Part shown: one piece after another, positions 12,157 to 52,800 of the stretch | How positions within the stretch are numbered: the first letter of the stretch is position 1 | How the letters are laid out: each line of letters begins with the position of its first letter | Assembly (NCBI RefSeq): GCF_003704095.1 | Contig: NW_020845796.1 | Span: forward strand, 1-64,000 | Direction of reading: 5' to 3' | DNA length: 64,000 nt | Origin: Pocillopora damicornis | Lineage: Eukaryota | Made by a program: the position numbers and the translations under genes | Notes under the pieces: model-generated | What the model was told of the DNA's origin: nothing | The model's database searches: none | Seen by the model: the letters and a program-made list of their open reading frames with translations, nothing else

Positions 12157-14936
12157 ATGGAGCAAAAAGACGTGTATTACAACAAAGCAGAATATATAGA
12201 AACTGTAAGTGTAACAGATCGTTGATTTGAAACCCTACATGATTCAATTTAGGCGTGTGCTTGAACCATCTGGAGGCATTCTCCATTCTTCACGAGGAGT
12301 TAAACTTGTTTATTTGTTACTCAGGCATCAGGAAATAAAGTAAGCCGTCAGTCAGTTCTCTGTGGGAGTCAAAATATTGTTTTAAACGGAAAGGTAGGTC
12401 TTATAAAATCGGAGTGGTATTTCACTGTCATCAAATATCATTGAAAGTTGTTTACTGATCAACAATATTAATCCCTCTTTCAGACAATCATTCAATCGGA
12501 TTGTATTTTACGTGGAGATCTTGCAAATGTCAGAATCGGAAGACAGTGCGTGATCAGTAAAAGAAGTGTAATTAGGCCGCCATTTAAGAAATTCAGCAAA
12601 GGGTTTGTGTTGTTTTTTGTTATTAACCCTCTTTGCCCAAACATCAGTATGCATATTCTCTATACTGTTCTTTATACATTTCCTAAAGTACTGACAAGGA
12701 GAACTTGTTTAACAATCAAGAGCTTCTTTAGTAGGTGATCATTTCCTTTATTCTCCTGACCTCAATATGTGATTCAGGGGTGATTCTGTAAGGAGAAATT
12801 AGATGCTGGTCATTTGAAGAGGTCAAAGGGTTAACATTTCTTAACATTTCTGCCTTATTAATTATTAGTTATTATTAAGTAATTACTAGGGAAGATGGAA
12901 TTTTTTTACAACTTAATGGCTTGTTTTTCAAGTGCGAGAACTATACTGTTATATCTCAAGAATACTGAATTGATTGTACTTCTCTTCTGATTTGTATTTA
13001 GAGTTGCATTCTTTCCCCTCCATATTGGAGACCATGTTATTATTGAAGAGGATTGTGTCATCAATGCTGCTCAAGTTGGTTCTTATGTCCACATAGGAAA
13101 AAACTGTGTAATTGTAAGTTTGAAAATTAAAGTATACCTTATAAACAGTAGATTACTAAATTACTACTAACTAAACTTTCTGCTGATGAGAACATCTTCT
13201 TTTGAATAATACTGGTCTATGTGTCTACCTAGTTCTAAAATGCATTAATTAACTTACAGCCCGTCTGTAATTTGTCTTGATAGAATATGTTGGGTTGAAA
13301 TGCATTCACATTTTTCAAGATCATATTTCATCCTAAGCTAACATTGTATTACCTTGGTGCTAAATTTTCTTCATCTGAATAAAAGAAGGATTAAGCCACA
13401 GATTTGAAGTCCTCATATTTATATTCCTTAAATTTTCCTTTACCATATGTTAATGATCTGCTGGATTAGTCCCTCTCTCAAGAATATTTGGATGACACTT
13501 AACAATAAAGTCTTGAGATGAATTTTGCAATTTGGACAGAAAATGTGGAATTCAAAATTTCACATCATGCTGCTCCTCTTATTTTTTAGAGGAGTTATTT
13601 TAAAGGATCAAATCAAAACTGCCCAAGAAATACAAATAATAATTGCAATTATTGAAGTAAAGGATTACCATTTTTCTGTTTGATGTCTTTTTAAGGGTCG
13701 CCGAAGTGTATTAAAAGATTGTTGTGCTATAGCTGATAACACAGTCCTCCCCCCTGAAACTGTTGTTCCACCTTTTACTCTGTATTCAGGCTCACCAGGT
13801 ATGTCACCAATTTTTCTGTACAACTTTAGTTCCCATTATGACTAAATTGAACTGAACCACCTCCTCACCCGACTCTGATGCTTACTTCTCCACAGGTTAA
13901 CAAAATTTAAGCCTTGATAAAAAACAACAGTTCCTCCAGAGAATACATTCACCTGATTGTTCAAATCATATGGTGCACACCCCTATTTCTTCATTGTAAC
14001 AAAATCCTGCATATGTCATCAAACACTTTGATCAGTTTGTGCCCCTAACCCTTCAAGTCCCAGAAGTGATTCATGTGTAACTTCTCCCTAAAATATCCAT
14101 CCACAATCTAGCAAACAGGTAATGAGAGTACTCAAATGTATCGGGTAGAAGTTGTTATCTTGATCTAACACCAAATTCTTGTAACTAATTTACAAGGAAA
14201 TGTATAGCAGCAAGAGGGGAGAATTAACAATCAGATCCTGGGAGTTAAAGGGTTAGGGGATTTTTCATAGGAAACCCTGGAGAGTATTTGTTTATAATTG
14301 AACACAAACATTAATCTCCTCAAACATAGTACTTTTTATGGGTGTTCTGTCACACTAACCTGTTAGTTTCTTTGTTTTACCCTATTACTTTGGATGACTT
14401 TTTCTCCTTAAAAGCTTCAGATTTTACATAGTTAATGTGATTTATCATAGATGAATCACAGACCAGCAATTAAAAGACACAAGAGAAATGTTTTCAAATT
14501 GGATCAATGATAATTAGCATATAGTGAAACAGTGGTTAGCATTGAAGGCGTGCTCTGATTGGCTACTCAAAGTCCAAATATCCTTTGTTATTCACCTCCA
14601 AGCAAGTCAAGCAGACTTTGCACCTGAAAATATTTTAACCCTTACTGGAACAAATGAGTTAAAATCATCTTTTTGTGCTATATCATTTTACTGTTTTAAT
14701 ATCACATTGTGCTAAAGTGACTTTCTACCTCAATGTCAGTGGCCAGTGGTGTTCCACCATCAGCCACTGCACTTCGGTGTTTAGATTTTAATTATAACAA
14801 AGTGAAACAACTCACTTACGGTGCTTTCTTGTCAGGTGTGTTCTCAGCAGAATTACCAGAATGTATGCAGGAAATTATGACAGAGAAAACGAAAGACTAT
14901 TACCAACACTTTCTACCCATTTCAGAAGAGAAATGA
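12157..14936 (+). CDS. DCTN5: Dynactin subunit 5 (p25), left-handed beta-helix protein
   Basis: Exons 12157-12204, 12325-12393, 12484-12602, 13002-13113, 13696-13798, 14836-14936. Translation [115 protein letters not shown] closely matches metazoan DCTN5. Confidence 0.96.
12623..12834. mobile_element. TTAA-flanked piggyBac-type MITE, subfamily B
   Basis: TTAA-CCCT...AAAGGG-TTAA, 212 bp, in DCTN5 intron 3. Confidence 0.8.
14045..14256. mobile_element. piggyBac-type MITE, subfamily C (reverse orientation)
   Basis: CTAA-CCCTTCAAGTCCCAG...CTGGGAGTTAAAGGG-TTAG, 212 bp; near-colinear with 39676-39887. Confidence 0.8.
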
Positions 14937-16487
14937 CAATCAGACGACTTCATAGCCTATCTATTTAAACAATTAGGCGAGTTTTTGTGATTATGAAAAT
15001 ATAAAACAAAGGCAGAAGGTTGTGGGTTTTGTTGTGTGGATCAGGTTTCCTCCATTCATTGGTTTTCTTTATAATCAAATTATGGAATGTAATTCATTAG
15101 CCATAATAGCTGTAAGTCCTCTTATAAATGGTTACTGTTTCATGCTGGGGGTCCTCTGGTAGATATTTAATTTGTAAAAGCCAATGATATCAAGTATTTG
15201 TGACAGTTGAGTCATGCTAAGGAAAATAGATAGTGAAGTGTAAGGAGCTTGTCTCCATCTGCTTAATTTGCATGTTAGCAAATAACATAGATTCTCGGGA
15301 AAATAAATTGTTTAGTGTAAGGTGCTGTGTCTATATCATGCTACATTTACAAATTACAGACATTCCAAAGATGATAACTTTAAATGATAAGTTACTAAAG
15401 GTACATGATATAAATCATGTATACGACTTCTTTTTCTCCCTGACACTTACAGAATAATTTTGGCCAGGATATTTTTGATGATTTAGACTTAAAGAAAAGG
15501 AATAAGTCAATCTAGTGATAAAAAGTATTTTCTTCATGGGTAATCTCACAAGAAACTCAAAATGATGTAAAAGAGGCCCGTTAGTGATAGGGACTACTAC
15601 TCAAGAAAATCTGATTCTCTTTTTTCTCTTAAAACTGCAAGGAGGGAAAAGGCAGACAGATAGACGGGCAGACATTATTTAACAGCTAAATGTAGCATAG
15701 TAATAATGTGAGCTCAGTGATGTGTGGGTTGTAGAATACTGCTCAAACCATAGCTTGGTTTAAAGGGGAGTGCACAATCTCAGAGAACAAGTACTTAGGC
15801 TGATGTGAATCTTATTTTGCATGGTTGAAAATTCTCACTTGGAAAATTACAGCCAACTAGAACACAGTATTCCAGAAATTAAGTGTTCTAAAATAGGATA
15901 TACATGGAAGTCACTTGGGTGAACATCTGTTGTAACAGAAAGCACACGCAAAGTTTATGGTTATGGTGATGTTTGGATAGCAAACACCTGATTAACAGTT
16001 TTTAATGCTTATTTTTGTTAGTTATTAGGCAAAATAAAAAAAATGTAGCTATATACACCATGCAAACTGTTTGGAATACTTACTTTGTTTAACTCTGCAG
16101 GCGTTGACCTGTTGACATTATTAGCATTTACATTTGCGATAGCTGACTTTTTGTGTTTACAAAACTTCATTGCGAGGGGTGGCACAGGAGAGTTTGGCAT
16201 GGTTATGTTACCCTGAGACAGTATGAGGGTTTGCATGACTTGATGCAAGAGATAATTCTGCATTTTGCTGATATGTAGGTAGCCTAATCTTCCTTGTTAG
16301 CACCTTGGACCACATTTAAATATATCAGGAGAATGTAAAGGCCCCTCTGATCCGTGAAAAACGTGGGTTTTTTCGAAGCAGTTCTACGATATTCGATCGT
16401 CTTGTTTCGAGTTTCCATCCCAATTCCACGTTCCTCGTTTGCCATTATCTATCTTCCAGTCTCTCGCAAATCAAGTATTCTTTCAAT

Positions 16488-18275
16488 ATGGCGGACGCCG
16501 GCAGTGAGTTACGAAAGTTTACCACGGATTTATCACTGTACGAAAAAGGAAGACCAGAATACACTCAAGAATCTGTTAGATGTCTCCTTAATCGTGTCGG
16601 TGTACTGCCCTGGGACAGGAAGGAGCCCATAAAACTTTTAGAGATTGCCTCTGGAACTGGAAAATTTACGCGAGCTATGGTTAAGGTGTTAGAGGCAGAG
16701 AGAGCTAACGTGGAAGTCATTGCCAGTGACTCTCAGGAGGTAATGTGCGATACGTTCCGAAAACTTGTCCCTGGAATCGAGGTGTATCACTTCCCGGCAG
16801 AGAAAATCGGTGAGGCACAATCCACGCCATCATGATGTTTGACTCCCTCTTGACCTTCTAACTCAAATTATGTTGAAAATAACCCATTTCAGCGAGTTAT
16901 CCATTTCTCGGTTTACTACATAAGAGAAGCCCTCCCTTGTTTTTTATTTAGAATTTGACTTATCTCTTTATTCCTAAGAGCGGTCGTAAATATACCTATA
17001 CAGGCTCTTATAATTTCGCAAGAACTGGAGCTTGGGCCACCTGTGCACGCACACACTTTGATCTCTAACATGCGGAACACTAAATTTTGTATGTGGAGAG
17101 CAGCGAGTCAAATCAACCACGTTACCCCTATTCCTTGGGAGGACTTTGAATTTTCTCTTTTTGTCACACTCGAGATGATACCAAAAACACCTTTCGTTTT
17201 TTTTTTTTTTTACAGAGTTTGTTTGACACGAGAAAAGGTCTTCAAATTTGTAACCCATCCTCAGAAGGGGTTGGCCAGTGTTAATTTTGTTCCTGCCTGG
17301 TCTTTGGGTGTATATCATATTATCTTCCACTTGCAGTTTGGAACATACACATACCAGCTTGTTTTATCATACAAGATAATTGATTGGCTTTTAACTGTCA
17401 CATGCTACTGCCCCCCCATAGCCACACCTCTACCAGGTTAGATAGTGTGATCTTGCAATATGTACCCCATAAGAAAAACCGGCAATTTCTTAATGCTCCA
17501 ACTTTGGAAAATATAGTAAGTTTTGAGTCTGTTTAGAGGCCATAATATTTGTAAATATGATTTAATTTATAGTGATAACTATTTCAATTTTTTCTGCATC
17601 AATCTCATCTTATCAGAAAGAGGATGTTGAGGATAAATGTTTTGATAAATGTTTTGATAAATGTCACAGTTTAAACCAGTCAAAAGCATGGTGAAAACAG
17701 TGGCAAAAGTTGCACCCTCTTGCATTCTCCTTTTCAGTGCTACATTTCTTGTCTGAATTATTCCTTTGTCTTGTGTTAAACTTTCAGCTCTGCCAGATGA
17801 AAGCATTCCAGTTATAATTTGTGCACAATCATTTCACTGGTTTGCCAGTGAAAAGTCTGTTGCTGAGATTTGTCGTGTTCTTAAACCTGGAGGCAAGTAC
17901 GGCATGATTTGGAACCATAGAGATTTTTCTGTTCCATGGGTGAGAGCTATGCAAGATATAGTCAATCCATTTGTGAGACAAAAAGATATGCCACCTGATC
18001 CTAGAGAACTAAAATGGATGGAAAGTTTAAATGGCTCTGGCAAAGTTACCTCAGTAGAAAGGGACATTAGCTGTAGAACATACCTGGAAGGAGACATTGA
18101 TAAGATAGTGTCTGTGATCATGTGTATCAGTGCAATCAGCCAGAGCAGCAAAGAAAAGAGAACAATAGTTGAATCTAAGATTAGAGATATTCTGATCAAC
18201 CACCCTGATCTAAAAGGGACACAAATTTATAAGCTACCTTATATCACAGATATCTGCTGGTGTAATAAAAAATGA
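16488..18275 (+). CDS. Class I SAM-dependent methyltransferase (Methyltransf_11-like), 269 aa, two exons
   Basis: Exons 16488-16809 (donor GTGAGG) and 17788-18275 (acceptor tttcag) join in frame (810 nt including stop). Motifs YEKGRPEY, motif I LLEIASGTGKFT, IICAQSFHWF, EICRVLKPGGKYGMIWN. Confidence 0.9.
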
Positions 18276-20171: not shown

Positions 20172-23100
20172 CTAATCAAGTTCAGCCCTGACGTTCCACA
20201 TCAAAATTTCTGACTGGCTTGTTGAACACAGTAGTTCCCCAGTTGGTGCAAACCTAACATTGTTCACACCATCACAGTGTCCCACGAAATCCTGAAAGCT
20301 TCCCTCATTGTAGTCCATCAGTTTGACTAATCGCTCTGTAAGTAGAGCAAAATAGATTCTCATCGTAAGGGTTCTTATTGATTATAAAACAATTGAGATA
20401 CTGCAAGAGATACTACTTCAGCTTTTGATTTAAAAACTTTTTTTGTGTTCTTCTACAAGAGGGACAAGGTTGGGTTCCCTTATACAGGGAGTTACAATTT
20501 GGTATTGTGTGGTTTACAAACCTTTTCATTCTGAAAATGGTATTGCTTGGATATTGCACAAAGATATGTAAAAGTAAATTTGACTCACATCAAAGGTTTT
20601 GTTAGATTTAATTTCCAGGTGTGTAGAGTTTTGCTTGAGCTCAGACTTGTGCTGTGGGTTTCAACTAAATTTTACCACAATGCCTTTCAAGCAAAAAAAT
20701 AAAATATATTGTAACACCAGACTACCTTCTGTTGCAAAAGCAATGAGATGTCCCATGGGTGATATATCCATGGAGGTCACCCACTGAGTGAGTGCTGCAG
20801 TATGTACAACCTGAAAAGAGACATATATTAGGATGTGAAAAAGTTGACCCCTCACAGCAAAACAAGTCTGAAAACTGAAGGCAGCCATTAGAATAGGCAC
20901 CCCACAACCACAGTAGTCTTTATGAATAGTTTAATTGTACAGATAGTAAATAACAAGTGAACATGCAAACTTCCTGATTTAGATATATACATTTTAGCAT
21001 TTAACATCAACTCTCACAACAAGGCTGTGGGGAATAAAACCAGTAAATTCTGTTGTTTGCTACCCAGGGCTTCACGCCAAGGTCTTTGTGTTAATATTGA
21101 AAATTAACATATTGAAGTTTGGTTCTTGCAAGTGACCTTTCTACTATATTGGAAATATTACTCTAGTCTGCAAACATGGGACAGTGCACCATTGGTTGAA
21201 GTGAGATTGCATGACATCATAGTTATATACATTGAAGATGAGTCAAGACAGGGGAGAAATGAGGGTTGAGCTGCTAAAAAAATATTTTACACACAACATT
21301 TTTTATTTTCTCTTTGTAATTAAGAAAAAAAAACAAAGGAGAATTATCCAGAGTCTCCTAATTTGTGTTGATGACAGAACCAATAGAGTGAGGAAGATGC
21401 TACATTTTGAGTTTGGAAATTTTCAATTTTATTTAAGTGTAGTGCAAAGGGGAATTCTAATGGTACTGGAATGATGGTACCTTTTTCTGAGCCAGACTGT
21501 AGAACTGAACAGCTTTCTGCATGCCATAGCCAGTGTAAACAACAATGTCAGGGTCTGTAGGAGAGAATTGGGCCAGGCTTGGAGGCAGCTGTGAGAAGTG
21601 GGCCTGTTTTAGGTGATATTCATCAACAAATAAGCTTCATGACAAGTAATGTCACTCTCTAACTTATAGCATGATGAAGTCACAGCAAACAGTTATATAC
21701 AGTTATTGATTCTTGCAATGGTATTATTTTGCCCACTGGTCAAGACCTTTATAATTTAAACTCAGTCTAATCATTTGGGATAGGGAAGTACTGACATGCC
21801 TTGCTGCTGGTGGCAGTGACTATAGGTTTCAACAATGTGAGCCAAAGTAAACATCAGAGTGAAGGGACTGATAATGACTCTCAATCTCTTAACTACTGAC
21901 AGCAACCCTTGTAAAGACCACTCTCAGCTGAATGGCGAGACTTCAAGACACATCACCCTCTTACATTGTGGGCATTGTACAAAGTAACCATTACGTTACT
22001 GTTACACTGTTACAAGGAGCCCTTCAAGCTCATAATAAATTAAACTAGTCTAACAATCATGCTAACATCAAGTATGAGATGAACACCAAAAACATGTCAA
22101 ATATTCTTAATATATTTCTACGTGACATACAGGGTCCCCTCTCCTAAGAGCTTGTCCATCAGGTCCAAAGGGTGGGGCAGGAAATGTCAGCCAGTCTACT
22201 AATTCACAGAAGTCTTTGGACCAGTCAGCACTCCAGATACTGATGCGGCGATCAGCACTTGCTGCTAGCCACAGCAATGGGGATGACATTGGGTACTGTT
22301 GATCCTGTGGTGGTGTAAAGAAAAAGAAGAAGAGTTACCAAAATATTTAACAATGTAATGTTAACTCTCTTTAATAATTGTAAGAAACATGTAAAAAAAC
22401 CTAACTTTAAGGCTAAATTATATTGAAAAATCACTACTTAACGAAAGAACTGCATGCATGCTAACTTGCAAGATGAAAGCCATCATTGAATGAATTGTGA
22501 AGCAATGAAAAAGATATTAAATTTTTTTAAATTTAGCATGGAATTTATCGTCGGTCGTTGAATTTTCCTATGGAATCTTGAATTATAACTTAAGATAATT
22601 TAGTCTTCAAAGAAAAAGTTACACTGTAGCTTAAAGTCCAATTATGAGTGGCATGTCTACAGGTATAATGCAAAATGCATGTAACAATGCAGCAATGTTC
22701 ATAAGATAACTCTAGGAAACTTCAGTTGACCTTAATAGATGAGATGTGAATACATGTGATTGGTGCACCCTTGTGATCATTCAGAAGTCTCACTGTCAAC
22801 CCTGTTGAGGGACTACTGATAGCCAGCAAACCATCTTCAGCACCACTGATAATCACTCTTCCTGTAACAGTTATGCATGTATTACAGTGTGTAAAAGGTT
22901 AATGAAGTTACATGCATAACTCAGCATAGTATTTTGCTGTCTTCTTTGTTTTTTGTAAAAGAAGTAACATTAAACCCTTCCACAATGTATCCCAGACACT
23001 CCAACCATCTTGAAGCTCAAGAGAAGAGCCACATGATTTGTAAACTCGTTTTTTAGTGTAAATCTAGAAACCAGAAGAAACACAAAAATATTTTTGGTGA

Positions 23101-23719
23101 AAAAATGCACCGACATATGATGCATACTCTTACCAAAAGATGAGAATGCTATTGCTGTCACTGCGGCAGCATGAGGCTGCATTTTCATAACCATTTCCAC
23201 TTTACCCAAATCAAATATTCTGATAGTTCCATCACTGTACCCAGCAGCACAATGTGAAGGGTGAATAATAGTCTCATCATCAGGTTGAGGCTGTGGGTGG
23301 ACAGTTGCGATAGTCTGTCCCTCGTTTGTGACAGATTTAGTGGGAGTGGCAGTTGGTACTGGACTGAAGGACACACAGTTGCAATTCTGGAAAAAATTTA
23401 GTTGTTGATAAACCCACAAATTTAAAGCTATTTTTTCTACTTTCATCAAGATACTTGCTTCTTTTCTGCAAGGCTTGAAATTTGGGATAAAATCAATTGG
23501 GGAATTTCACCATGAAGCTCAAAGTTTTCCAAAAGCTTTCCTCCCTGAAAACTGTTCCCTTCTTGAAACAGATAATGTCTGAGAATTGACAACTATATAA
23601 GCAGAGTTTGGCATCAAATGGGGACTATTACTTAATACATATTCCAACAGCTTCAGTTTAGGAAAATTTTGGTCCCACGAACTTTTTAAATCAATAACAT
23701 GCCAGCTAAAATATGATGG

Positions 23720-23757
<38 letters not shown>

Positions 23758-26700
23758 AGTACCAATGAAACCAACAAATAATATGCAGTATTATACCTGT
23801 CCAAGAACTTGAAACTGAAGATGTTCCAAGTTATCCTTGCTCCAGAGATGTAAGATTCCATCAGTGCTACATGTTGCAAAGTATTGGTCATCTGGACCAC
23901 TGAAGAGTAAGTCATTAATCTACAAATAGGAAAAATGGTGAATCATCATTGAAAATTGTTTTAATTAGGTATCAGCACTAATACGTTTCTTGTTATTGAT
24001 AATATCTGAAAAGATAAGCTTCAAGAAATTTATAGCATGCCTAGTCATGCTGACATGCATACCATGGAACTTTCTGGAATGTTCCAATAGGTCGCGTAGT
24101 TATGATGTAAAACTACCAAAACAGTTTTGTTGTAAGATTCCTGAATGTTCTAGAATACTTTGTAAATGTATACATGGACTGGCACTCATGTGGTAGTAGT
24201 TGTTGTTGTTGTTGTCAGGAATGACTGAATTTCTGGATAGCTAGACTGAGAGAGACCTACTGTGGAAGATTGTTCATTTCAAGGAACTTTGGAGAAAATT
24301 GTGAGTTTGTGTCAGTGGAGATCTAAGATATAGACTGCGGTAGGCTTAAGTAAGTTTATGGAGGATAATAACTGTTTCCTTGTTAAGAATATCACTCGAA
24401 GTTTAATAAAGTAGTTGAGTTTTTAGGATTGTAGTGTTCTTTCTGTTGGTTAAATTAAACTGTAACATTCTATACTCAGCCAATCACTACATCATGCTTC
24501 AAAACTGAAAAGACAAGGTTACACTATCATGCTAAACCATCAAACTGGTTAACTAAGCAATCGTAAACCAATCAGGAAGAATGAATGATCAACATTGAGA
24601 GTAGGACTTCCTATAAATCCTTCAAAGAAGCAATACTCACCTTCTGTGCATGGCCACTGACCAACCTGATACTGGTTCTTTCATCCCAGTTGACATACCA
24701 TAATGTACCTGATGATGTACCGATAATGCCCTTTAAAAAATGACACAACATGAATTCCATTAATTCTGTTAATGTAGTAATGATTATAAAGTACAGTGAC
24801 ATGAAATCAACAAGAGGTGCAAGAAAAGAATGAAACTCACAGTTTCCAATGCTTCATCAAATGATGCAGAAATAATGGCTCCATCAAGTGTCATTTCATC
24901 TTCCATAACCAAACCATTGCTGGATAATCTAAAAAAAGTACAGATTAATAAAATTCTCTTTTTCACTTGGGTGGTAATAATTGTTAAATGTGATGGAAAC
25001 TGGGCATTTGAGAGAACTTTCCATGACTGAAGTACAGGAAAGCTAATGGAATCAGGCATAAAATTAAATATTGTCTGTGTTAGCTATGAACTTTTCATTG
25101 TGGTTTATTGTACCTTGTGGCATCTCCAGGAAGTCGCATCTCACTCACTCCTACCACAGACCACAATCTGAGATTCCCTGAGGCACTGCCAGCAATAAGA
25201 GTACCACCATATCCCATAAGCATACCTACAAAAATTTAATCATGTTTTTAAAAGTCAGAAATGTACCACTGCATGTACAATATATGGTATGCAGTAAGCA
25301 ATTTTGGTTGTCATTGATTTATAGCAGTGTTCTGTGTTTGCTCATTGTATCTAGTATTTCCACCATCTCTCAGGGACCTCCCCAAAACTTCAAAGCCCAT
25401 GTGACATTTGTCATGTTTGCACTCATCCATTCCATTGAAGGCTAGATTTCTCCAATGCCTTTTTCTAAATTCTACTACACCTGCGTACCAATTTCAGCAG
25501 AGTCTCCTTGCCAGTGAATGAAGCACTTGTTCTGCCTGGTGTCCCAGGCAGATAACATTCCTGTTAAAAAAAGACACATTTTACCTATTGCCTTCTGTAA
25601 TGTTTTTTTAAATAACCCTTCAACTCCAAAGAGTAACTAGCTTCTAATTTCTCAATACAGTATCATCCCTGAGTAATCCCTCTAACTTGGCTTTATAAAG
25701 TCTAAATAAGTCAATTGAAGAACAGTTAATTGCACAATGAAGAAGTAGTTGTGCTGTCAGAGGTGACAAGAAAGTACTATGCATTACAACTTCGACAGGT
25801 GTATATTGTTTAGACTAGCAAATCACTGCTGGGTGTTTAAATACCTGAGCTTGTAGCAGCATACATAGTACTGTCTCCTGCATACCAAACAGCTGTGAAA
25901 TCATAATACTCATCTCTCTGTGAAGAAAATTAACTTAGTTCTTGTAAAGGATTCACTTATTGTGCATTGTAGTATGTTCTTTATGATCCTTTTCAGAGCA
26001 GGTTGCCTTAAAGTACTATTAGAACTCTTCAAAAGTTATAAAATTGATATGAAAGAAGGTAATCACAATGGCCAAATAAAGCCCTAAGACCATTTGGGAG
26101 ATTAGAAAAAGGGGAAAACTACCCTACAGGTTGTTTCATGACCTTAGAAAAACTAATACTACTGAGAAGACAAACAAAAGCAAAAATTAATGAAATAAAC
26201 TTACAACTTTCTTGGACTGTGTAAGTTCATCTGGAACCTCTGGCTCATGAACCTAAACAATATTGAAGAACTATTAGTTGCTCTGAAAAGACTTTGGTTT
26301 CTCATTTAAAAAGCTCTTTCCCTTATCCTTGACTTGTATGAGTGCTGCTGTTGGGCAGGGGGGATTCAGTGTTTGGGCTGATCACATTACAAAATAGGCT
26401 GTAATAATTGTTTGGTAGGGAAGGGGGCAAAGTTATTATTAATAGCTGGTTGTCTGAGGGAAATGTTACACATCTGATTACAAACCCCCTCCAAGCTCTA
26501 ATCCAAGGTTATTGATTTTCAGTTGTATTTTAAAAAAGTTAAGCTAGTGTTTACGTACATTGAGTGTCATCTGATCACCAGTCTCATCCAGTAACCAAAA
26601 CAACACAGAGCCATCTTGACCCACAGAGCAAAATTCATTAGCAGTGTATGGATCCCACATGATGTCATGAACTGGATGCCTGGCAAAAGAGGAGGCAAGG

Positions 26701-35700: not shown

Positions 35701-37778
35701 TGGCAAAAAATAATAATCATATGCTGAGAGTATTCACTGTTCTCAAAAATTAATGACAAAGTTTCCTAGTGAGTCTAATGATGAGGTGAATACTTAACAA
35801 TCTATTATCATCCTTGTAGAATGTATTGTTAATTTATCTGCCAACTCAAATAAGTTTTGAGATTGGAGGAGACTGTGTGGTGTGCCATGGGTCAAGACTC
35901 ATTTACCCCCTAGGCACAAACATAACTCAGTAACTCCCTGGGGAAACAACAGCTCAAAGTTTCACCTTATACCTGATCAGGTTATCAGCTTTTTTGGGAA
36001 AAAAGCTTGAAATCTACTAACAAGGCCAACTACAATAATGTGAAAACATTGAGAGACTTCTTCGGAGATTTAAACTAAACAGACCTTAACAATGAAAGTG
36101 CTCAAGAATGCAATAGCTCACTTCATCCAAGAGTTCTATGGCAAGGATATACTATGCTATTGCCAGATACTTGCAAGAGAAAAAAGGTTTAAAACCAATG
36201 AAGATGAAGCATTTTATTTGGCCAATGAAGTGATTTGGACTGTGACTATAGAACTGGAAAAGCTTGGGAAGGCAAACATGTATAATTTGTTCTATTTTTG
36301 AGTTGGGATATATTACAAATCACTTGATGACTGGGCCCCCCCAGGAAACACTGAATTTTGTTTTTTTGGGGGCCAGTCATTAAGTGCTTATTGTACACAG
36401 CACATTTCATACCTTTATGTCACCTCTTGAGTGTTGAGAAGTTTCTTGGGAAAGTTTTGCAGATGAACCAACCTGATTGACATGATTTACTCTGACCCGT
36501 CTTTCTTCCCTTGCAGCGGTTGGAGGTTGCTCCCCATTGGCATGTTGTAATGTAGACTTCATATTTGCCATGATTCCAAATTGTGCAATTTTGGAATCAG
36601 GAGGGAATTTGATGTAGTCATATAACTGGTCCCAATCTGCTCCCTTGGCTAAAGGAAATGCCATTTCTCTTGGCAAAGGACTGATTCCTTTATCCAGTAA
36701 GCCTAGTTTTCTGGCTTCAGAAGCAGAAATGCCAGGTGCATAATCTATGTCACTTGTAAAGAGTCCTTTGAGAAACATGTTGGCACACAAGCGAATGCTT
36801 TTCATGTAAGAATATTGGCGGTTCAGGTAGACAGAAAGGATGTATCGAAAGTCTAGCACCAGAACAGTCCAGCGAGTTGTTTGAGAAGTAGTGCCCACAA
36901 GACCTGATGGAGAAAAATGAACAGAAGGAATACCAAGCCTAGTCAATAAATGTGTAAAATTGTACTACACTCAGTCTTATTTCTATTATATCACCACACA
37001 CAAAACCCACCAGTTACCTATTTACTCCAGTGAAGGGTTAACCCTTTAGCCCCTAACATCAATATCCATTTTCTCCATACTATTTACTATACATTTCCTA
37101 AGGTGCTGACAAAGAGAATTTGTTTAATAATCAACACCTGCTTTAGTTGGTGATCATTTCCTCTATTCTCATGACCTTAATGGTTGATTCAAGGGTGATA
37201 TTGTAAGGAGAAATTAAATGCTTGTCACTCTTAGAGGTTAAAGGGTTTATAGAGCTTAAAATGACAGCTTTTCAAAATTTACCATGTCTCTTAACTGACC
37301 TTTATCAATTTGTGGCTGATAATAACCACCTATATGTATTCACTAACCCACCAATCTAACATGAAAGTTCTTTTCCAAACTAATAAACTCATTGCCCAAA
37401 AAAGGTTATGTCTGGTTACATTTAGTTATACCAACTGATGCTAACACAATCCTCACTTGTTATGGTGCCCGCTTCACTGAGAGTAGCTTCATCCACTGAA
37501 CCAGGAGGAGGGCTGGAGACAAATGGAAACTGTAGCCATGTTGAGGTGGACTTGAACTCTTTAAACATATTTGAGAAGGAAATCCTAATGGTAAGTCCAT
37601 CATCTGTTGCTAAATCCACATGGACAACAAAGTACTTTCCAGCAATCGGACGGAATAGGCAGTACAAGAATCTACCGGTCAACCCTAATGACTGAGTGCT
37701 GGTGCGAGGGAACTGAATGAAGTTGCTGGCAGGAATTGATCCAGTGATTCTATAAACTGTGCCTTTCACCTGTTTGTC
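20172..37778 (-). CDS. WDR90: WD repeat-containing protein 90 (centriolar; CFA20/DUF667 domain plus multiple WD40 propellers); first exon and some internal sequence lost in N gaps
   Basis: N-terminal DKQVKGTVYRITGSIPASNFIQFPRTSTQSLGLTGRFLYCLFRP..ISFSNMFKEFKSTSTWLQFP is the WDR90 CFA20 domain. More than 30 GT-AG exons encode WD40 repeats (e.g. 37778-37457, 36902-36414, 31826-31574, 30374-29995, 28319-28064, 27559-27354, 26826-26559, 23386-23133, 22304-22129, 20335-20172), ending LMDYNEGSFQDFVGHCDGV..ILMWNVRAELD*. Confidence 0.93.
23721..23756. repeat. (TTA)12 microsatellite
   Basis: Direct reading of the sequence. Confidence 0.95.
23991..24467 (+). mobile_element. Solo LTR (probably Gypsy-type) in a WDR90 intron, antisense to the host gene
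   Basis: Termini TGTTA...TAACA, 4-bp target-site duplication TTCT on both sides (23987-23990, 24468-24471), AATAAA at 24405-24410, length 477 bp. Confidence 0.75.
24066..24156. promoter_or_regulatory. Two perfect four-unit heat-shock elements (HSF sites) and a CCAAT box inside the solo LTR
   Basis: gGAActTTCtgGAAtgTTCc (24066-24085) and aTTCctGAAtgTTCtaGAAt (24137-24156) are uninterrupted alternating nGAAn arrays; CCAAT at 24084-24088. Confidence 0.7.
32018..32232. mobile_element. piggyBac-type MITE, subfamily A
   Basis: ATAA-CCCTTTCACTCCC...TTTAAGGG-TTAA; body colinear with 47843-48054 and 59821-60028. Confidence 0.8.
36318..36390. repeat. Short inverted repeat (internally deleted foldback element)
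   Basis: AATCACTTGATGACTGGGCCCCCC ... GGGGGCCAGTCATTAAGTGCTT. Confidence 0.55.
37038..37249. mobile_element. piggyBac-type MITE, subfamily B
   Basis: TTAA-CCCTTTAGCCCC...GGTTAAAGGG-TTTA, 212 bp; body matches 12623-12834. Confidence 0.8.
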
Positions 37779-37958: not shown

Positions 37959-40776
<2,818 letters not shown>

Positions 40777-42850: not shown

Positions 42851-45800
42851 CTAGCAATAAAATCTTGAAAATGCAACTTTGGTGTAATCTGGTCTCTGAT
42901 TCCAGCTGTTTTCAGGTACTGTGGCTATACCTTTTGAAATACAAAGAAATATCAGTGTGGAACAAAATGTAACAATATCTAATAATATCACCATCATCAT
43001 CATGGGTATTATTAAAAGCTGTGTTCATGGACATGACACTTAAATTTCACAATGCCTCTTTCAACCTAGCAATGTTAATGGCTACCAAAAAACTTCCCAG
43101 GAAACAGAGAAAACAAAATTTGCCAGTAAGTTACTTTCAAAGGTTCAGCCCTACACTCAAGGGAACTTGCAACCTAAAGTCTACTCATGCTTTGTAAACT
43201 GAGCTATGCTCTAGAATTTCACTGAGTTGGAAAGACTTCACCTAACCAATCAGCAGTGTATAAGATCAATTGCTCTGACTGCCATGCATCCCACATCGGT
43301 GAGACTGGCAGAAACCTCACAACTAGACTGACTGAACCTAAACAGTCACAAATAGTCACCACTACCGATACCAGTCTTTCTCAGGACTTCACTCACCCAG
43401 ATGATCAAACAACACTATTACATGTTACCTCTGCATTCAAACCATTTACTATGTGTAATATATCAATCAACACAAATAAAGTAAGCTTTTTCAAGTACAA
43501 TATACGTGTAAGTGGAACTATACAACCATGGACAACATCAACACCATCCTCTGAAAGTTGTACTCACCATCAGTCAATGCTCGCTCTACTTTTTCATCCT
43601 CGTGGATTTCCCTGTAAAATAATTTTCAAGTTATGCTCACACAACTCAAATTAACTCTTAGTCATTAATTTGCACTACATCAATTTTTCACTCTTCTAGT
43701 GGGGAAAGAGAAATTAGTGCAATGATGTATGAAAATAGACCATCACAGAGACTCCAAAATCCTCTGTTTACACTCTAGGATAAGTGTGCATCCTTGAAAA
43801 CAAAATCATTTGTTCCACAAGTGACTAAAATGCATACTCCTAAAAGATGTCTTGTGTTTCATCTGAAAACCAAGGAGATGGTGTTTGAAACTTCAAAATA
43901 GTCTGACTAATGGAGTAAATAACTGCAATGGCTTGCAAAAGGATGTACAATTTTTTTCAGTTGGAAAGTGGCATAAAAGATACAAAATTATCNNNNNNNN
44001 NNNNNNNNNNNNNNNNNNNNNNNNNNNNNNNNNNNNNNNNNNNNNNNNNNNNNNNNNNNNNNNNNNNNNNNNNNNNNNNNNNNNNNNNNNNNCTCTGTTT
44101 TGCATAGTACAGAATGAGACAGTACAATTTGTAAAGGTTACTTACAGGTATATCAGTTCTGACTCCCTTCTCATTATCACATTCCTTTCATGAACCACAC
44201 TGAGCCATTCCCTCAGAAGTTCTTCCTCACAATCATTGAAGGGTCTTTCAGCTATAGAGATAGTTTGAAAATATTGTTCAAAATCTCAACTATCAAAATT
44301 TTCTGCACAAGGATTACATGCACATAGAGCTTAATTAAGACAGTATTTTTAAAGTATCTTTCTTAATGATTTAATTGTGAAGTAAGGTGTTTAAAATTCT
44401 GCATTTGTGTATAAACCAAGCTGGAGAAACAATTGCATACTTACAGTCCATACTTTCCCTCAAGTTGTGTTCAATTTTCACTCCCCGTCTTTCCAGCTCT
44501 CTGTGTAATGCCTCCAGAGACTGTAATTCAGTATCAATCTCTGCAGGAGAAAGTGTTATTTCTTCCTCCTTAATCAGATCAGTACTGTTACAGCCGTGAT
44601 TCTTAGCACCCCGCAATGAGAAAATTGCATCTCTTTCTGCTCTGCTGGTTTTACTATTTTCTCTACCAAAGCAGAATTCTCCCTCAACTTCCATGACACA
44701 TTGATGCTCCTCTGCAATCCTATGATATTCCAAGTCCCAGGGTTCCATGGTTTCAACAGTGAAAAATCTGCTGTTAATTTTGGTGGTAGCTGCTTCCTGA
44801 GCTATGATGATGGACATTCTAGGTGAGCTGCATGATGAACTAGAGCCACTAAAAGATGCTCTGTGTTCACTTGATAAAGGCAAGGACCATTGAATCTCAG
44901 GCAAATAGCCAATACCTGGTGATGATGGATCACCTGAAGTTTGCAAATCTTTCAAACTTTCTCTTGGCAGTTGTTTTTCAGTGGGTGACACAGATGAATC
45001 ACTTCCTGAGAAGGAAAATTCTGCTGCAACTTTCAAATTCCTTGCAGACATTTTGTCATCAGCTGACAGAGACCTCTGAAAATTACTTTGTGTATATAAA
45101 GGCATATCAATACCACTGTCATGGGATGCTGAATGTCTTTTTAACCCTGGAGAATTTTGTTCATGATTAGGAGAATGAGGACTAGCAGGTTCAACTTGAA
45201 GTGATGGAACCTCGCTTGACACCTGGTCAGACTTAGTCTCCGAGTAATCATTTTCTGTAGAAGGTGGCCCTCCACTAATTTGACTGTCACTTGAAACACT
45301 TTCATCTTGTTGCGTGTGATCAACATTTATAATTACTATGTTGTCATTTGCATCTATACTTTGCAATCTATCTGTAGAAGTATCAGGTAAGGTAACAAAT
45401 TCAGTATCCCTAGAGTCAGATGAATTATTGTTGTCCTTAGACCCAGTTGTATGATCATCAGCTTGTTCTGTACTTTCTTCACTTCCAAGCTCAGAAGAAT
45501 CAGATTTTTCTTTGGATTCACTTGAAGGGAGATCAGCTGTTTTTTCTGTAACAGTAATATTTGACTTTTGTTCAATTCCTGCGGAGGAATTATCAGATTT
45601 TGATGGTACTATATCTGATTTCCCTCCAACAGATTTTCTTTCACTACTTCCATTGTCCATATACATTTTTCTTAATTCCTTAACACTCCGCCGACTTGTA
45701 CCAAAGCTTGGTTTCTTTACCTCAGCTGCCTTTCCAGAGCTTATTGAATGTTTCCTTGATGTAACTTGATGAGATTCTGTCTGTTGTTTCCAAGCAGAGA

Positions 45801-48800
45801 CACACCTTAGTTCTCTCTGAATTTCAACACTTTTCTTCGCCAAGTTATTCTTGTGTTTTTCATCAATCATGTCATTAATGTTCAGAAACTTTTCCCGCAG
45901 TCTTTGTACACCCTTGGCAGCTGTTGAAGGCTCAGACTCTTCAGAAACACTTGTCTTCCGTGATGACACTGATTTTGTTGACTTAGTTGAATCACTTTGG
46001 ACACTAGAATCTGAACATTTATGCTGATTGTCTGGCTTCTCCAAGTTGTCCTCTTTTGAGTTCCTGACATGACTATCAGATTCATTTTCCAATGAATCAC
46101 TGTCTCCAGTTTTGCTGTTTCCTAATTTTGTCTTGGGTTCCTGATTTGAAAATTCTGGTGTAACACAATCAGTATCACCTTCCTTCGCTACCTTATCATC
46201 ATCACTATCCATTTTACCTTCTGTTGCCCTCTTCAGTAATTCCTCTTTAAAAGAAAAAAGAAGATTCACAGAAGGCGATTCTGGCTCTTTTGTAGACCTT
46301 TGATCATCAGGTTTCTGTTTAAGTTTTTCCTCCTCCTCTTGCTGTTCTTCAGATACAAAAAGAGACTTTGATAATGAAATTCCTGAACTATCATCTGGTA
46401 CCTTCACACTCAAGGTCTTGCTTACCACTTCACTACTGCTATTTTTAACACTATCACTTTCATCATCAACTAGACTAATATCAGGAGCTCGTCTTTTGTT
46501 TTCTGGTGACCAGGAGGAATTTCCCTGATCACCCAGTTCCTCAGAGTCAAAATATCTTCCTTTCCCATCACGTTTTTTCCTGGGTCTTCCTCCACCAGAG
46601 AATCGCCGTTTTTTCTCACCAGGCTCAATTCTCTTTGCCTGTGACCTGTCATAACGCTGTGATGAGTGTGACTGCTTTTGGCTTTTCATAACACGAGGTT
46701 TCCCTTGGGTTAGTGGCTGTGGCAATGCAGCTAATGTTATTGCATTCTTTTTAACAACTGAGAACTGTCTCTGAAGTGGGCTTTTATCAGATGGTTTTGT
46801 AGAATTGTTATCGGACAGATTGGGAGAAGATTCAGGTGATGGACCCTCCTCTGTTTGTTTTTGCTGGGCAGCATTTGTTAAGGGTTCTAGTTTAATTTTT
46901 ATGGGATTTTCCCTCTGACCTGTTGGGTAAAGCAGAAGAAAGAGATCTCTCAGACTTAACAGTCTCACTCACAAAATATAAATATAAATTCTCCATACTG
47001 TCTGTTAACCATTTCTCATAATTTAAGCAATGAGAATTTGTTATTAAATCAGTCAGTATTCCCCACTTAATATTCTTTCCTTCAAACCTTGAACAAACTG
47101 ACCACTAGCAAGAATATAAGACTAAAACATAATTAACACAAGTAATATTAAAATTGTTCCATAAAATCCTCCAAAATCTGATCTTTAACTCTCCTCTCAA
47201 GCTGCTACACATTGACTTGTAAATTAGTAATGAGTATTTGGTGTTAGATCAAGATAACAACTTCTACCTGATAAGTCTGAGTATTCTCATTACCTGTTTG
47301 CTGATAATGTATGAATATAATAAGGAGAATTTACTATTTAATCATTTCTAGGAGATAGAGGTTGAACTTAGTTACACCAGAGCCTCCAAAATAAAACTTT
47401 AGTAGAAAGCTATGCACTAGAATCCTATTGTTGGCTTGACATCTTCTTTCTGAGTATACTAGTATTCCTGATTGCAGTCTTTTGTATTAAAACTTGATTG
47501 CTTTGATTCATAAGTTAGAGAATTTTGGTATCAAAATTATTTTGGTAGTAAAATTGTAATTTCAGTACCTCCTGGGCAATCAAATAAACAGCAGAACTTC
47601 TGGGTATTAGGAAAGTAATGATATGTTCCAGGTCGAAGGCAGGCTTTGCATTTATCACATCTGAAGCATGCCCTGTGGAACAGCTTCCTTTCTGCAATCA
47701 GTCTTTCCATGAGAAACACTCTGCTGTGACAGATAAAACAATCATTTCCCAGCAATGGTGATTTTCCTGGTGCACTTGGGATGAGTTCATCAGTATTTCT
47801 GTTCTAAAAATAATACAAGGAATATCAATTATTATTTTCTGTTAAACCCTTTAACTCCCGAGATCTCATTAGTAATTCTTCTTACTGTCTGCCATACAGT
47901 TCTTGTGATGTTAGTTGGGAGAATTTGGGATTAGATCAACTTATAATCCCCTAATTGGTATTTTTCTTTATTCTCATCACTTATCTGCTTGATATTGTAT
48001 TGATATTGTAAGGAGAAATTCTGTCTTGGTCACTCATGGGAGTTAAGGGGTTAACTGAACTGTGATGATCACAGCCCTTTAACTTCAAGATCTGATTTCC
48101 TCCTAAATGTATTACAAGAATTTGGTTTTAGATCATATGACAATTTCTACCTGATATGGTTGAGTATCCTCTTTACCTGTTTGCTAAAAAATATATCAGT
48201 ATTTTAGGGAGAAGTTAAATTTTAATCCATTGTAGAGTAAAAGAGTTCATGACAGTGATCATCTGAGGGAATAATAATAATATGCTAATCATATCAAAGC
48301 AAGATGCTTCAAAAGGCGATGTGTAACCAGCTGGTCTCATTATCTGAAGAAGACTTGCAGATTGCAAAGTAACCAATGAGAGCATACCTTCTTAGGGAAA
48401 AAATTCCTGTTATATAAATCTAACAAATAATTATAAAATACATGTACTACTATCAACACTTACTGTTTCCTGGTTTGTCCTTAAAGGTTCAACGCTTAAA
48501 TATTTACTGCCTTGACCCTGCTCCTTGCTCTTGGTTGATTCTTCTTTAGCATCAGACTTGAAAACATTCCGCAAGGCTGTAGCAACCCTCTTTGCATGAC
48601 CTGACAAGAGGTATATCTGATGGGAAGGTGAGATACGCTTGCTGCCTTTGTGACCTGTAGATTCACTTCGTGTTTTTGGCTGGATATTCATCTTAGTGGA
48701 ATAGCCCTGGTTTGCTTATAATCAACAGAAAAAAAATTTCAACTTCAATACCTCAAAGCATATCAAGGTCTAAAAAAGTGCTAACAGAAGAGGACCTAAG

Positions 48801-52639: not shown

Positions 52640-52644
52640 AAGAA

Positions 52645-52689
<45 letters not shown>

Positions 52690-52800
52690 TATAGCAGGTA
52701 ATTTAGTGTTAACAACTGGGTTGAAAACGTAAATTAGCCACCGTAAAGGGTAGAAAAGCTGACGTTTCGAGCGTTAGCCCTTCGTCAGAGCGATTAGGGG
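52640..52800 (-). mobile_element. 161-bp hammerhead-bearing retroelement fragment (Penelope pLTR / retrozyme-like)
   Basis: Flanked by a 10-bp direct repeat CTGTTGTTGA (52630-52639 and 52801-52810); interrupts a foldback MITE; contains the hammerhead motif. Confidence 0.75.
52757..52792 (-). ncRNA. Minimal type I hammerhead ribozyme motif (Penelope/retrozyme type)
   Basis: Minus strand reads GCU-CUGACGA-A-GGGC-UAAC-GCUC-GAAA-CG-UC-AGC: conserved CUGANGA and GAAA boxes, 4-bp stem II, palindromic ACGU in place of stem III, GUC cleavage triplet, GCU/AGC stem I. Confidence 0.8.

What the first reader, a model, noticed from the sequence alone, without database searches (positions are those of the whole stretch)
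23991..24467. Solo LTR carrying two perfect heat-shock elements: footprint of a heat-inducible retrotransposon, antisense within WDR90
Seen: TGTTA...TAACA termini, TTCT target-site duplication, and AATAAA about 60 nt before the 3' end. The U3-like part has two flawless four-unit nGAAn arrays (24066-24085, 24137-24156) plus CCAAT. Established: three or more alternating nGAAn units are high-affinity HSF1 sites, and LTRs that captured HSEs (plant ONSEN) are heat-activated and confer heat response on neighbouring sequence. Inference: this animal, probably a coral, hosts an LTR family wired to the heat-shock response. Dispersed solo LTRs could act as thermal-stress promoters, here driving an antisense transcript into WDR90. 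This would be relevant to bleaching biology.
Basis: partly seen in the sequence, partly recalled or inferred. Interest (0 to 1): 0.75.

Follow-up and report, generated by a model that had tools for sequence, protein, structure and literature searches.

The report
Old coral LTR with heat-shock sites
A 477-base relic of an ancient jumping gene sits in an intron of a coral's WDR90 gene, and its whole repeat family was built with binding sites for the heat-shock factor in front of its promoter, although nothing yet shows that this copy responds to heat.

Summary
Window 23991-24467 has TGTTA..TAACA ends, a TTCT duplication and AATAAA 57 nt from its end. It also holds the only two perfect four-unit nGAAn arrays in the 64 kb (shuffles expect 0.00 and 0.01).

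It is one of at least 230-250 dispersed copies, at most 77% like this one and at most 88% like each other. Homology stops exactly at these ends, and the 4-bp duplication recurs across copies.

The arrays are ancestral. Copies share this order: array, ARE-like motif, array, array, TATA, about 230 nt, AATAAA. That is an LTR laid out as a stress promoter.

No full-length partner turned up. All 39 other copies inspected are solitary or lie inside segmental duplications.

A second, younger 229-bp family in the same genome has the same layout and is a proven LTR. It is preceded by a polypurine tract and broken RT, RNase H and integrase pieces.

Together the two families supply at least 55 of the genome's 192 perfect TTC-first arrays.

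The host gene is WDR90, and the element lies antisense in one of its introns.

Heat induction is untested. This copy's TATA is damaged, its own poly(A) signal is intact, and the RNA contigs look like unspliced intron.

Other readers of this scan noted likely sister copies elsewhere in this genome.

The parts
23991..24467 (+). The 477-bp element, read as a solo LTR (U3-R-U5) of 'family 1'
   Evidence: Homology to 29 other copies stops exactly at these two bases. There were 237 first-look candidates in the genome and 40 were scored, at 70-77% identity.
23987..23990 (.). Left copy of the 4-bp target-site duplication TTCT
   Evidence: Family-wide, 20 of 30 copies match at 3 or more of 4 letters.
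24468..24471 (.). Right copy of the target-site duplication TTCT
24019..24038 (+). Decayed first heat-shock array ('HSE0'): two perfect units (TTC, GAA), then TTA and GCA
   Evidence: At this position 8 of 30 copies keep 3 or 4 perfect units.
24039..24048 (-). ARE-like core: GCCTAGTCAT on +, which is ATGACTAGGC (RTGACnnnGC) on -
   Evidence: GCnnnGTCAY is in 16 of 30 copies and TGCTGAGTCA in 6 of 30. The motif names are recalled, not tested.
24066..24085 (+). Heat-shock array HSE1, four perfect units
   Evidence: 17 of 30 copies keep 3 or more units here.
24084..24088 (+). CCAAT, private to this copy
   Evidence: Present in 1 of 30 aligned copies.
24137..24156 (+). Heat-shock array HSE2, four perfect units, ending 12 nt before the TATA position
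   Evidence: 12 of 30 copies keep 3 or more units and 10 of 30 keep all four.
24169..24177 (+). Damaged TATA box (TATACATGG)
   Evidence: 14 of 30 copies have TATAWA here, for example TATATAAGG in L016 and L021. The window copy does not.
24197..24215 (+). Short GTT/TTG repeat at the presumed start of R; its length varies
   Evidence: One RNA contig of run X1 has an extra GTT behind 24198 (table 4).
24405..24410 (+). Poly(A) signal AATAAA, followed by a GT-rich stretch
   Evidence: AATAAA is at this position in 14 of 30 copies.
23920..24640 (-). Intron of the host gene that holds the element
   Evidence: Joint 23919>24641 with CT..AC ends (GT..AG on the minus strand) in RNA contigs of X1 and X4 (table 5).
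23797..23919 (-). WDR90 exon downstream of the intron in gene direction
   Evidence: Joints. The neighbouring exon stretch 22973-23506(-) hits PF23342 (WDR90 4th beta-propeller), 59.3 bits against a cut-off of 50.
24641..24729 (-). WDR90 exon upstream of the intron in gene direction
   Evidence: Joints 23919>24641 and 24729>24840.

Best explanation
This is a solo long terminal repeat left by an old LTR-retrotransposon family that now appears to be extinct in this genome. Shown: it is an insertion with TG..CA ends and a 4-bp duplication; it is one of a few hundred diverged copies; and they share one layout. Inferred: the family's U3 was built like a heat-shock gene promoter. It has up to three arrays of nGAAn units and an ARE-like motif packed into the 150 nt before a TATA box. 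About 230 nt of R follow, then AATAAA and a short U5. While the family was active, HSF trimers bound under heat would have switched on element transcription, as in plant ONSEN and flatworm LTR elements. The window copy is a fixed intronic relic in WDR90, antisense to the gene. It keeps two perfect HSF sites, but its TATA and first array are damaged and its own terminator is intact. At most I expect it to bind HSF and give a short, self-terminated antisense RNA or a weak enhancer effect. An effect on WDR90 is unlikely.
For: - Ends, duplication and chance level.
- Copy number and age: 231-252 first-look candidates; the best identity to this copy is 77% and the best between any two copies is 88%.
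- Shared layout in 30 aligned copies: HSE0 with 3 or more units in 8/30, ARE core in 16/30, HSE1 with 3 or more units in 17/30, HSE2 with 3 or more units in 12/30, TATAWA in 14/30, AATAAA in 14/30, all in one orientation.
- A 30-mer over HSE2 hits 76 places at up to 3 mismatches, against 0 for the reversed control.
- No tRNA or Rfam match, so it is not a tRNA-type SINE.
- No internal terminal direct repeats, so it is not a miniature LTR element.
- Analogy within the same genome: a 229-bp family has the same order (4-unit array, GTCATGCTGAGTCAT, a weaker array, TATAAAAG, AATAAA). It is preceded by the purine run AAAGAAGAGAGGA and by RVT_1, RT_RNaseH and rve ORF pieces, and it lies beside integrase in 4 of 30 integrase loci.
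- Host gene and orientation.
- Precedent that HSE-bearing LTRs are heat-driven: PMC12801592 (abstract and passages read).
Against: - No paired LTRs, primer-binding site, polypurine tract or gag-pol were found for this family. All 39 other copies looked at are solitary or lie in segmental duplications.
- The one purine-run pattern hit was not a family member.
- None of 30 integrase loci carries this LTR.
- The heat-shock core columns are only slightly better kept than the rest (0.876 against 0.834). As 20-nt blocks they rank 15th, 96th and 187th of 401, so nothing shows selection after insertion.
- This copy keeps 23 of 24 core letters against 83% elsewhere, which is about a 7% chance outcome (my binomial).
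- RNA evidence comes from contigs only and fits unspliced intron.
- No heat experiment or HSF binding data were available.
Confidence: 0.7

Rival explanations
1. One reading: this copy is a working heat-inducible promoter that sends an antisense transcript into WDR90 and so changes the gene's output under thermal stress.
For: Two perfect four-unit arrays lie 71 nt apart. The element is antisense in a WDR90 intron. The insertion is kept in the DNA of two other organisms (table 8).
Against: - The TATA box is altered in this copy.
- An intact AATAAA plus GT-rich tail about 230 nt downstream should end most transcripts inside the element.
- The RNA contig of this very copy spans 24126-24366, which is upstream of the TATA position. 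Another RNA contig bridges the 5' edge (23936-24104). Both fit intron read-through, at depths of 2.5-10.8 against 35-55 for the exons.
- No antisense joints were seen.
Confidence: 0.1
2. It is not an LTR. It is a non-autonomous unit moved by a DDE transposase or integrase that also makes 4-bp duplications and uses TGT ends (Ginger-type, recalled), or some other unclassified short mobile element.
For: No partner with internal genes was found for about 250 copies. The two ends share an imperfect inverted match of about 11 nt in many copies (by eye).
Against: No terminal inverted repeat extends beyond those few bases. The unit carries a promoter and a poly(A) signal in a single orientation, conserved across subfamilies. 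That is what an LTR needs and a cut-and-paste element does not. The look-alike family 2 is a proven LTR.
Confidence: 0.15
3. The nGAAn arrays are not HSF sites in this animal. They could be sites for another factor, or a by-product of sequence periodicity carried along by the family.
For: No binding or expression data exist. Conservation of the core letters is only modestly above background.
Against: Three separate arrays in register sit directly upstream of a TATA box, and the same arrangement occurs in an unrelated-looking second LTR family. The reversed-pattern control is 3.3-fold rarer genome-wide for the TTC-first array (192 against 58). HSF and its motif are conserved across eukaryotes (established knowledge).
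Confidence: 0.05

Closest known systems
ONSEN (ATCOPIA78) of Arabidopsis and other Brassicaceae
   Same: The LTR carries canonical heat-shock elements upstream of its start site, so the host's HSF drives the element under heat. This is as summarised in PMC12801592 (passages read); further details are recalled.
   Different: ONSEN is a plant Ty1/copia element with full-length active copies and shown HSF binding. Here the host is an animal, the family exists only as old solitary LTRs, its superfamily is unknown, no heat response has been shown, and an ARE-like motif sits between the arrays.
HSE-bearing Ty3/Mdg4 (Mag, CsRN1, Gmr1/Osvaldo) LTR retrotransposons of the flatworm Macrostomum lignano (PMC12801592, Mob DNA 2025)
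   Same: These are animal LTR families with one to four canonical HSEs upstream of the start site. They are more than 250-fold heat-induced, and mutating the HSEs abolishes the response. That paper notes that heat-induced LTR elements in the coral Acropora hyacinthus have no known cis-element.
   Different: The flatworm families are young, low in copy number (4-20 copies) and full-length. Family 1 here has hundreds of decayed solo copies. Family 2 here (RT, RNase H, integrase order, broken) is the nearer counterpart. Neither has been tested for heat response.
Helitron-borne HSEs of Caenorhabditis (PMC6927752, eLife 2019; abstract seen in the search listing)
   Same: A repeat family carries a large share of the genome's HSEs and can spread heat responsiveness. 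Here at least 55 of 192 perfect TTC-first four-unit arrays lie in two repeat families.
   Different: Helitrons are rolling-circle DNA transposons. In the worm, heat-dependent HSF-1 regulation of nearby genes was shown, whereas here the evidence is sequence only.

Membership tests
Solo LTR of an LTR retrotransposon | 5'-TG...CA-3' ends with a short terminal inverted repeat | tested here: met
   TGTTA..TAACA in the window. TG..CA is kept at the aligned ends in 16 of 30 copies.
Solo LTR of an LTR retrotransposon | Target-site duplication of fixed length, 4-6 bp | tested here: met
   TTCT/TTCT here. 20 of 30 copies match at 3 or more of 4 flank letters, against 1 of 16 for the control.
Solo LTR of an LTR retrotransposon | Dispersed copies with the same two boundaries | tested here: met
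   231-252 first-look candidates.
Solo LTR of an LTR retrotransposon | U3-R-U5 layout: promoter with TATA, then a poly(A) signal, in the same orientation | tested here: met
   TATAWA in 14/30 and AATAAA in 14/30 at fixed aligned positions. In the window copy the TATA is altered.
Solo LTR of an LTR retrotransposon | Related full-length copies: two LTRs flanking a primer-binding site, gag-pol and a polypurine tract | tested here: not met
   None was found among 39 other copies or in four place listings. The same-strand pairs on C1173, C3290, C905 and C1962 are segmental duplications or unrelated copies. The purine-run search and 30 integrase loci were negative. Only the best candidates are scored by the tool, so absence is not proven.
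Canonical heat-shock element (HSF site) | Three or more contiguous alternating nGAAn/nTTCn units | tested here: met
   Two arrays of four perfect units.
Canonical heat-shock element (HSF site) | HSF binding and heat-dependent transcription | not testable with these tools
   Only assembled contigs of RNA runs were on offer. They show no starts, no strand and no condition.
Heat-activated LTR retrotransposon (ONSEN-like, flatworm-like) | HSEs are a feature of the family, not of one copy | tested here: met
   HSE1 has 3 or more units in 17/30 copies, HSE2 in 12/30 and HSE0 in 8/30. 36 genome sites carry the two commonest family HSE2 18-mers.
Heat-activated LTR retrotransposon (ONSEN-like, flatworm-like) | Element RNA rises on heat stress | not testable with these tools
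   No heat-stress read data could be laid. Literature searches found no coral study linking LTRs to HSEs.
tRNA-, 5S- or 7SL-derived SINE | Pol III head related to a small RNA; A-rich or simple-repeat tail; duplications of variable length | tested here: not met
   No Rfam hit at E up to 1 and no tRNA-like gene in 23700-24800. The copies end precisely in ..CA and have a fixed 4-bp duplication.
Cut-and-paste DNA transposon or MITE with 4-bp duplication (Ginger-type, features recalled) | Terminal inverted repeats of tens of bases | tested here: not met
   The inverted match between the two ends is 5 nt perfect in the window, and no longer arm pair was found at the ends.
WDR90/POC16 (host gene) | WDR90-specific beta-propeller domains plus an N-terminal CFA20/DUF667 domain on the same strand | tested here: met
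   PF23342 scores 59.3 bits (cut-off 50) on 22973-23506(-). PF05018 CFA20_dom scores 27 bits (cut-off 24) on 36410-36964(-). Exons were searched singly and not joined.

The most novel reading that the evidence does not exclude
At least two LTR families have seeded this coral genome with ready-made stress promoters made of heat-shock arrays, an ARE-like motif and a TATA box. They supply at least 55 of its 192 perfect TTC-first four-unit HSF sites. A useful fraction of these copies may still bind HSF1 and fire under heat. That would explain the unexplained heat bursts of LTR-element RNA reported in corals and would give nearby host genes a transposon-borne heat or oxidative-stress response, a coral counterpart of the Helitron story in worms.
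Probability: 0.25. Interest if true: 0.8.

Novelty: new member of a known kind. Interest (0 to 1): 0.6.

Why it matters
Heat stress is what bleaches and kills reef corals, and HSF1 is needed for coral heat tolerance. That rests on a paper I saw only as a reference (Cleves et al. 2020, listed in PMC13104882).

A 2025 paper on flatworm LTR elements states that corals show up to 250-fold heat induction of LTR elements with no known cis-element (PMC12801592, passage read). LTR families that carry canonical HSF sites in front of their TATA box are a concrete candidate for that missing element.

Their hundreds of scattered copies also form a defined set of places where heat-responsive regulation of host genes can be looked for with ordinary ChIP, CAGE and reporter tests.

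For this single copy in WDR90 the likely importance is small.

Tried and rejected
Looking for a full-length family-1 element:
- All-against-all BLAST of 1.5-kb flanks of 30 loci found only a segmental duplication (L009/L018) and unrelated small repeats.
- Six further loci, including the four fetched copies that match the 30-mer perfectly, gave nothing beyond the element.
- The same-strand pairs on C3290 (14.3 kb apart, 77% alike), C905 (7.9 kb) and C1962 (2.9 kb) were rejected as LTR pairs. Their homology runs past the element ends, or the two copies are no closer to each other than to other copies.
- A pattern for a purine run abutting the family's 5' end gave 1 hit. That place has no family homology and lies among receptor-like genes.
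- 30 integrase loci gave 0 family-1 LTRs.

Other checks that led nowhere:
- Two metagenome scans gave 0 hits and then 3 chance 22-mer hits.
- A miniature-LTR (TRIM) structure was rejected, because there are no terminal direct repeats inside the 477 bp.
- A SINE was rejected.
- Homology between families 1 and 2 is not significant overall. Local alignment z-scores are 1.4-3.7 and the shuffle maxima are about as high as the real scores. Only the module of array plus GTCATGCTGA aligns.
- Selection on the arrays after insertion is not shown.
- RNA depth over R against U3 is not informative, because the same 4-5-fold step is seen in DNA (table 2).
- The site group TTCTGGAATGTTCTTGAA on C4221 is a 1.77-kb tandem duplication unrelated to either family.
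- No empty-site joint is listed, but 7 of 22 joints were not shown.
- Supplementary tables of PMC12801592 were not opened and do not bear on the claims here.
Full report
THE SEQUENCE.
- TGTTA is at 23991-23995 and TAACA at 24463-24467.
- TTCT is on both sides, at 23987-23990 and 24468-24471.
- AATAAA is at 24405-24410.
- Two arrays of four perfect alternating nGAAn/nTTCn units are at 24066-24085 and 24137-24156.
- CCAAT is at 24084-24088.

Each four-unit pattern occurs once in the 64-kb window, and 100 dinucleotide-preserving shuffles gave means of 0.00 and 0.01. The three-unit pattern has 5 strand matches in the window, and 4 of them are these two arrays.

IT IS A MOBILE ELEMENT WITH THESE EXACT ENDS. 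A search of the window's own 234-Mb genome gave 237 first-look candidates, of which 40 were scored, at 70-77% identity over nearly the full 477 nt.

The ends TGTTATG... and ...CGTAACA recur. The 4-bp duplication is a family trait. 20 of 30 copies match at 3 or 4 of the 4 flank letters. Among the 16 copies that keep TG..CA, 12 do so, against 1 of 16 for control flank letters.

The family is old and split into subfamilies. No two copies are more than 88% alike, and the window copy is at most 77% like any other. Searches with two other members gave 231 and 252 candidates.

THE HEAT-SHOCK ARRAYS BELONG TO THE FAMILY. I aligned 30 natural copies and built no consensus. They share one layout in one orientation:
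- a first array ('HSE0', window 24019-24038), with 3 or more perfect units in 8 of 30 copies; the window copy has 2;
- an ARE-like core GCnnnGTCAY in 16 of 30 copies (window 24039-24048), with the longer TGCTGAGTCA in 6 of 30;
- HSE1, with 3 or more units in 17 of 30;
- HSE2, with 3 or more units in 12 of 30 and all four in 10 of 30;
- twelve bases later a TATA box (TATAWA in 14 of 30, for example TATATAAGG in L016 and L021);
- about 230 nt, starting with a GTT repeat;
- AATAAA (14 of 30), a GT-rich stretch, and about 40 nt to the end.

A 30-mer over HSE2, copied from L026, hits 76 places in the genome at up to 3 mismatches. The reversed control hits 0.

This is the layout of an LTR (U3 with enhancers and TATA, then R, a poly(A) signal and U5) whose U3 resembles a heat-shock gene promoter. 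CCAAT is private to the window copy (1 of 30).

IS THERE SELECTION ON THE ARRAYS? Only weakly, if at all. The window copy was left out of this test. Core GAA/TTC columns have a mean plurality share of 0.876 against 0.834 for other columns, and 149 of 10,000 random column sets reach that value. As 20-nt blocks with the same mask, however, the three arrays rank 15th, 96th and 187th of 401.

The window copy agrees with the plurality at 83.2% of non-array columns and at 23 of 24 HSE1+HSE2 core letters. By my binomial estimate that is about a 7% outcome. The arrays are therefore ancestral parts of the element that decay roughly like the rest. Nothing shows that the host has preserved them.

IS IT REALLY AN LTR? 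The defining test is a full-length relative, and it failed.
- Flanks of 30 loci share nothing next to the element, except in one segmental duplication (L009/L018).
- Six more loci gave nothing.
- Across the place listings, the only same-strand pairs within 15 kb are on C1173, C3290, C905 and C1962. All are segmental duplications, with homology running past the element ends, or unrelated copies that are 77% alike.
- A search for a purine run abutting the 5' end gave one place with no family homology.
- None of 30 integrase loci carries this LTR.
- Two metagenome scans gave nothing useful.

Against the alternatives:
- No tRNA-like or Rfam match.
- No internal terminal direct repeats.
- No terminal inverted repeat beyond a few bases.
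- A promoter and terminator in one orientation, kept across subfamilies, is what an LTR needs and a cut-and-paste element does not.

I put the LTR reading at about 0.8, with the whole population being solo LTRs of a lineage that has died out here.

A SECOND FAMILY SETTLES THE PRINCIPLE. I counted all perfect TTC-first four-unit arrays in the genome: 192 sites, against 58 for the reversed control. 84 of them have the central GAATGTTC, against 8 for the control.
- 36 of the 84 carry the two commonest family-1 HSE2 18-mers.
- 19 belong to a different repeat.

That repeat is a 229-bp unit with 32 candidates at 77-93% identity over its full length. It starts TGTAG and ends TTCA. It runs: a four-unit array, GTCATGCTGAGTCAT, a weaker array, TATAAAAG, AATAAA. 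That is the same grammar as family 1, although the overall similarity is not significant.

On C3883 (L049), three copies of it are each directly preceded by the purine run AAAGAAGAGAGGA. One lies downstream of ORF pieces that hit RVT_1, RT_RNaseH and rve, in that order. It also lies beside integrase matches in 4 of 30 integrase loci.

Family 2 is therefore a genuine LTR of a Ty3/Gypsy-order element, broken in the copies seen, and it carries canonical heat-shock arrays. So this coral does host LTR elements wired in this way. The two families together supply at least 55 of the 192 perfect TTC-first arrays. GAA-first arrays are less enriched (121 against 78).

THE HOST GENE AND THIS COPY'S STATE. 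RNA contigs of two studies give a chain of minus-strand GT..AG introns. The element fills most of intron 23920-24640.

Exon stretches searched one at a time hit the WDR90 fourth beta-propeller (PF23342, 59.3 bits) and, further upstream in the gene, the CFA20 domain (27 bits). The gene is WDR90/POC16 and the element is antisense to it.

DNA contigs of two other organisms bridge both edges with 2-3 differences in 300-530 nt, and no empty-site joint is listed. The insertion therefore looks fixed among close relatives.

In RNA libraries, a contig identical to this copy covers 24126-24366 at depth 10.8, and another bridges the 5' edge (23936-24104) at depth 2.5. The exons are at 35-55. Both contigs include U3, as unspliced intron would, and contigs cannot show starts or strand. 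The high depth over 24260-24443 in RNA mirrors the same step in DNA and reflects other copies.

This copy's TATA is changed to TATACATGG, its first array is decayed, and its AATAAA is intact. A transcript started in it should mostly end inside it.

WHAT IS KNOWN. Canonical HSEs in LTRs that confer heat activation are established for plant ONSEN and, since December 2025, for four flatworm Ty3/Mdg4 families (PMC12801592; abstract and passages read). That paper notes that heat-induced LTR elements in the coral Acropora hyacinthus (Traylor-Knowles et al. 2017, seen only as its reference 34) lack any known cis-element. HSE-rich Helitrons diversify the worm heat-shock response (PMC6927752; abstract in the listing).

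Five full-text searches found no paper describing HSE-bearing repeats in a coral or other cnidarian. A Nematostella preprint (PMC13104882; passages read) counts promoter HSEs but does not link them to repeats.

Two first-reader notes on other pieces of this genome (s1-783766, s1-777715) describe 450-488-letter LTR-like elements with heat-shock elements and an antioxidant-response element. They are probably sister copies. They gave me the lead to look for the ARE-like motif, which I then counted in my own alignment. I did not check that those places belong to this family.

VERDICT. This is a new member of a known kind: LTRs that carry heat-shock elements, here in a coral, as an old solo-LTR population plus a younger proven LTR family. 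Heat responsiveness itself, and any effect on WDR90, remain untested, and for this copy they are unlikely to be large.

Noticed in passing
L048:1489-1717 (G000:C1766:41469-41697); L049 (G000:C3883:1574800-1584500); L043-L047: A second, younger LTR family of 229 bp with 32 candidates. It has a perfect four-unit heat-shock array, GTCATGCTGAGTCAT, TATAAAAG and AATAAA. On C3883 it is preceded by a purine tract and by broken RT, RNase H and integrase pieces in Ty3/Gypsy order.
   Followed up: yes
G000: C266:287150, C1535:157161, C1546:197651, C1801:296842, C1899:721311, C352:4005: Six of the first 50 listed GAA-first four-unit arrays share nearly the same 18-mer (GAACGTTCYRGAATGTTC). This may be a third repeat family that carries heat-shock arrays.
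   Followed up: no
L080 (G000:C4221:3700-6700); also C3883:555087 and C3883:555835: Sites reading TTCTGGAATGTTCTTGAA on C4221 lie in a tandem duplication with a period of about 1.77 kb (92% alike). It is unrelated to both LTR families.
   Followed up: partly
window 24197-24215: The GTT/TTG repeat inside the element varies in length. One RNA contig of run X1 has an extra GTT behind 24198.
   Followed up: no
window 2382-4421 (-): A single 680-residue open stretch with a MYND-type zinc finger and SET-like motifs by eye. It looks like a SMYD-family gene with a very long exon.
   Followed up: no
window 16320-16832 and 17757-18272 (+): Two open stretches that look by eye like a class I SAM-dependent methyltransferase gene, on the strand opposite to WDR90 and just beyond its 3' end.
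   Followed up: no
window 44374-46968 (-) and 47540-47803 (-): An 865-residue serine-rich open stretch, followed upstream by a cysteine-rich LIM-like exon. This is a separate minus-strand gene beyond the WDR90 start.
   Followed up: no
window 12620-12856, 14039-14255, 37035-37271, 38334-38544, 39669-39886, 47845-48061 and others: Several short dispersed repeats of 80-230 nt occur in direct and inverted orientation across the window. They look like MITE or SINE families. Another first-reader note (s1-769294) places a hammerhead ribozyme at 52630-52810.
   Followed up: no
L037 (G000:C905:480000-489900), L038 (G000:C1962:22500-28000), L009/L018 (G000:C1173): Family-1 copies have been carried along in segmental or tandem duplications of 3-13 kb at three places.
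   Followed up: partly
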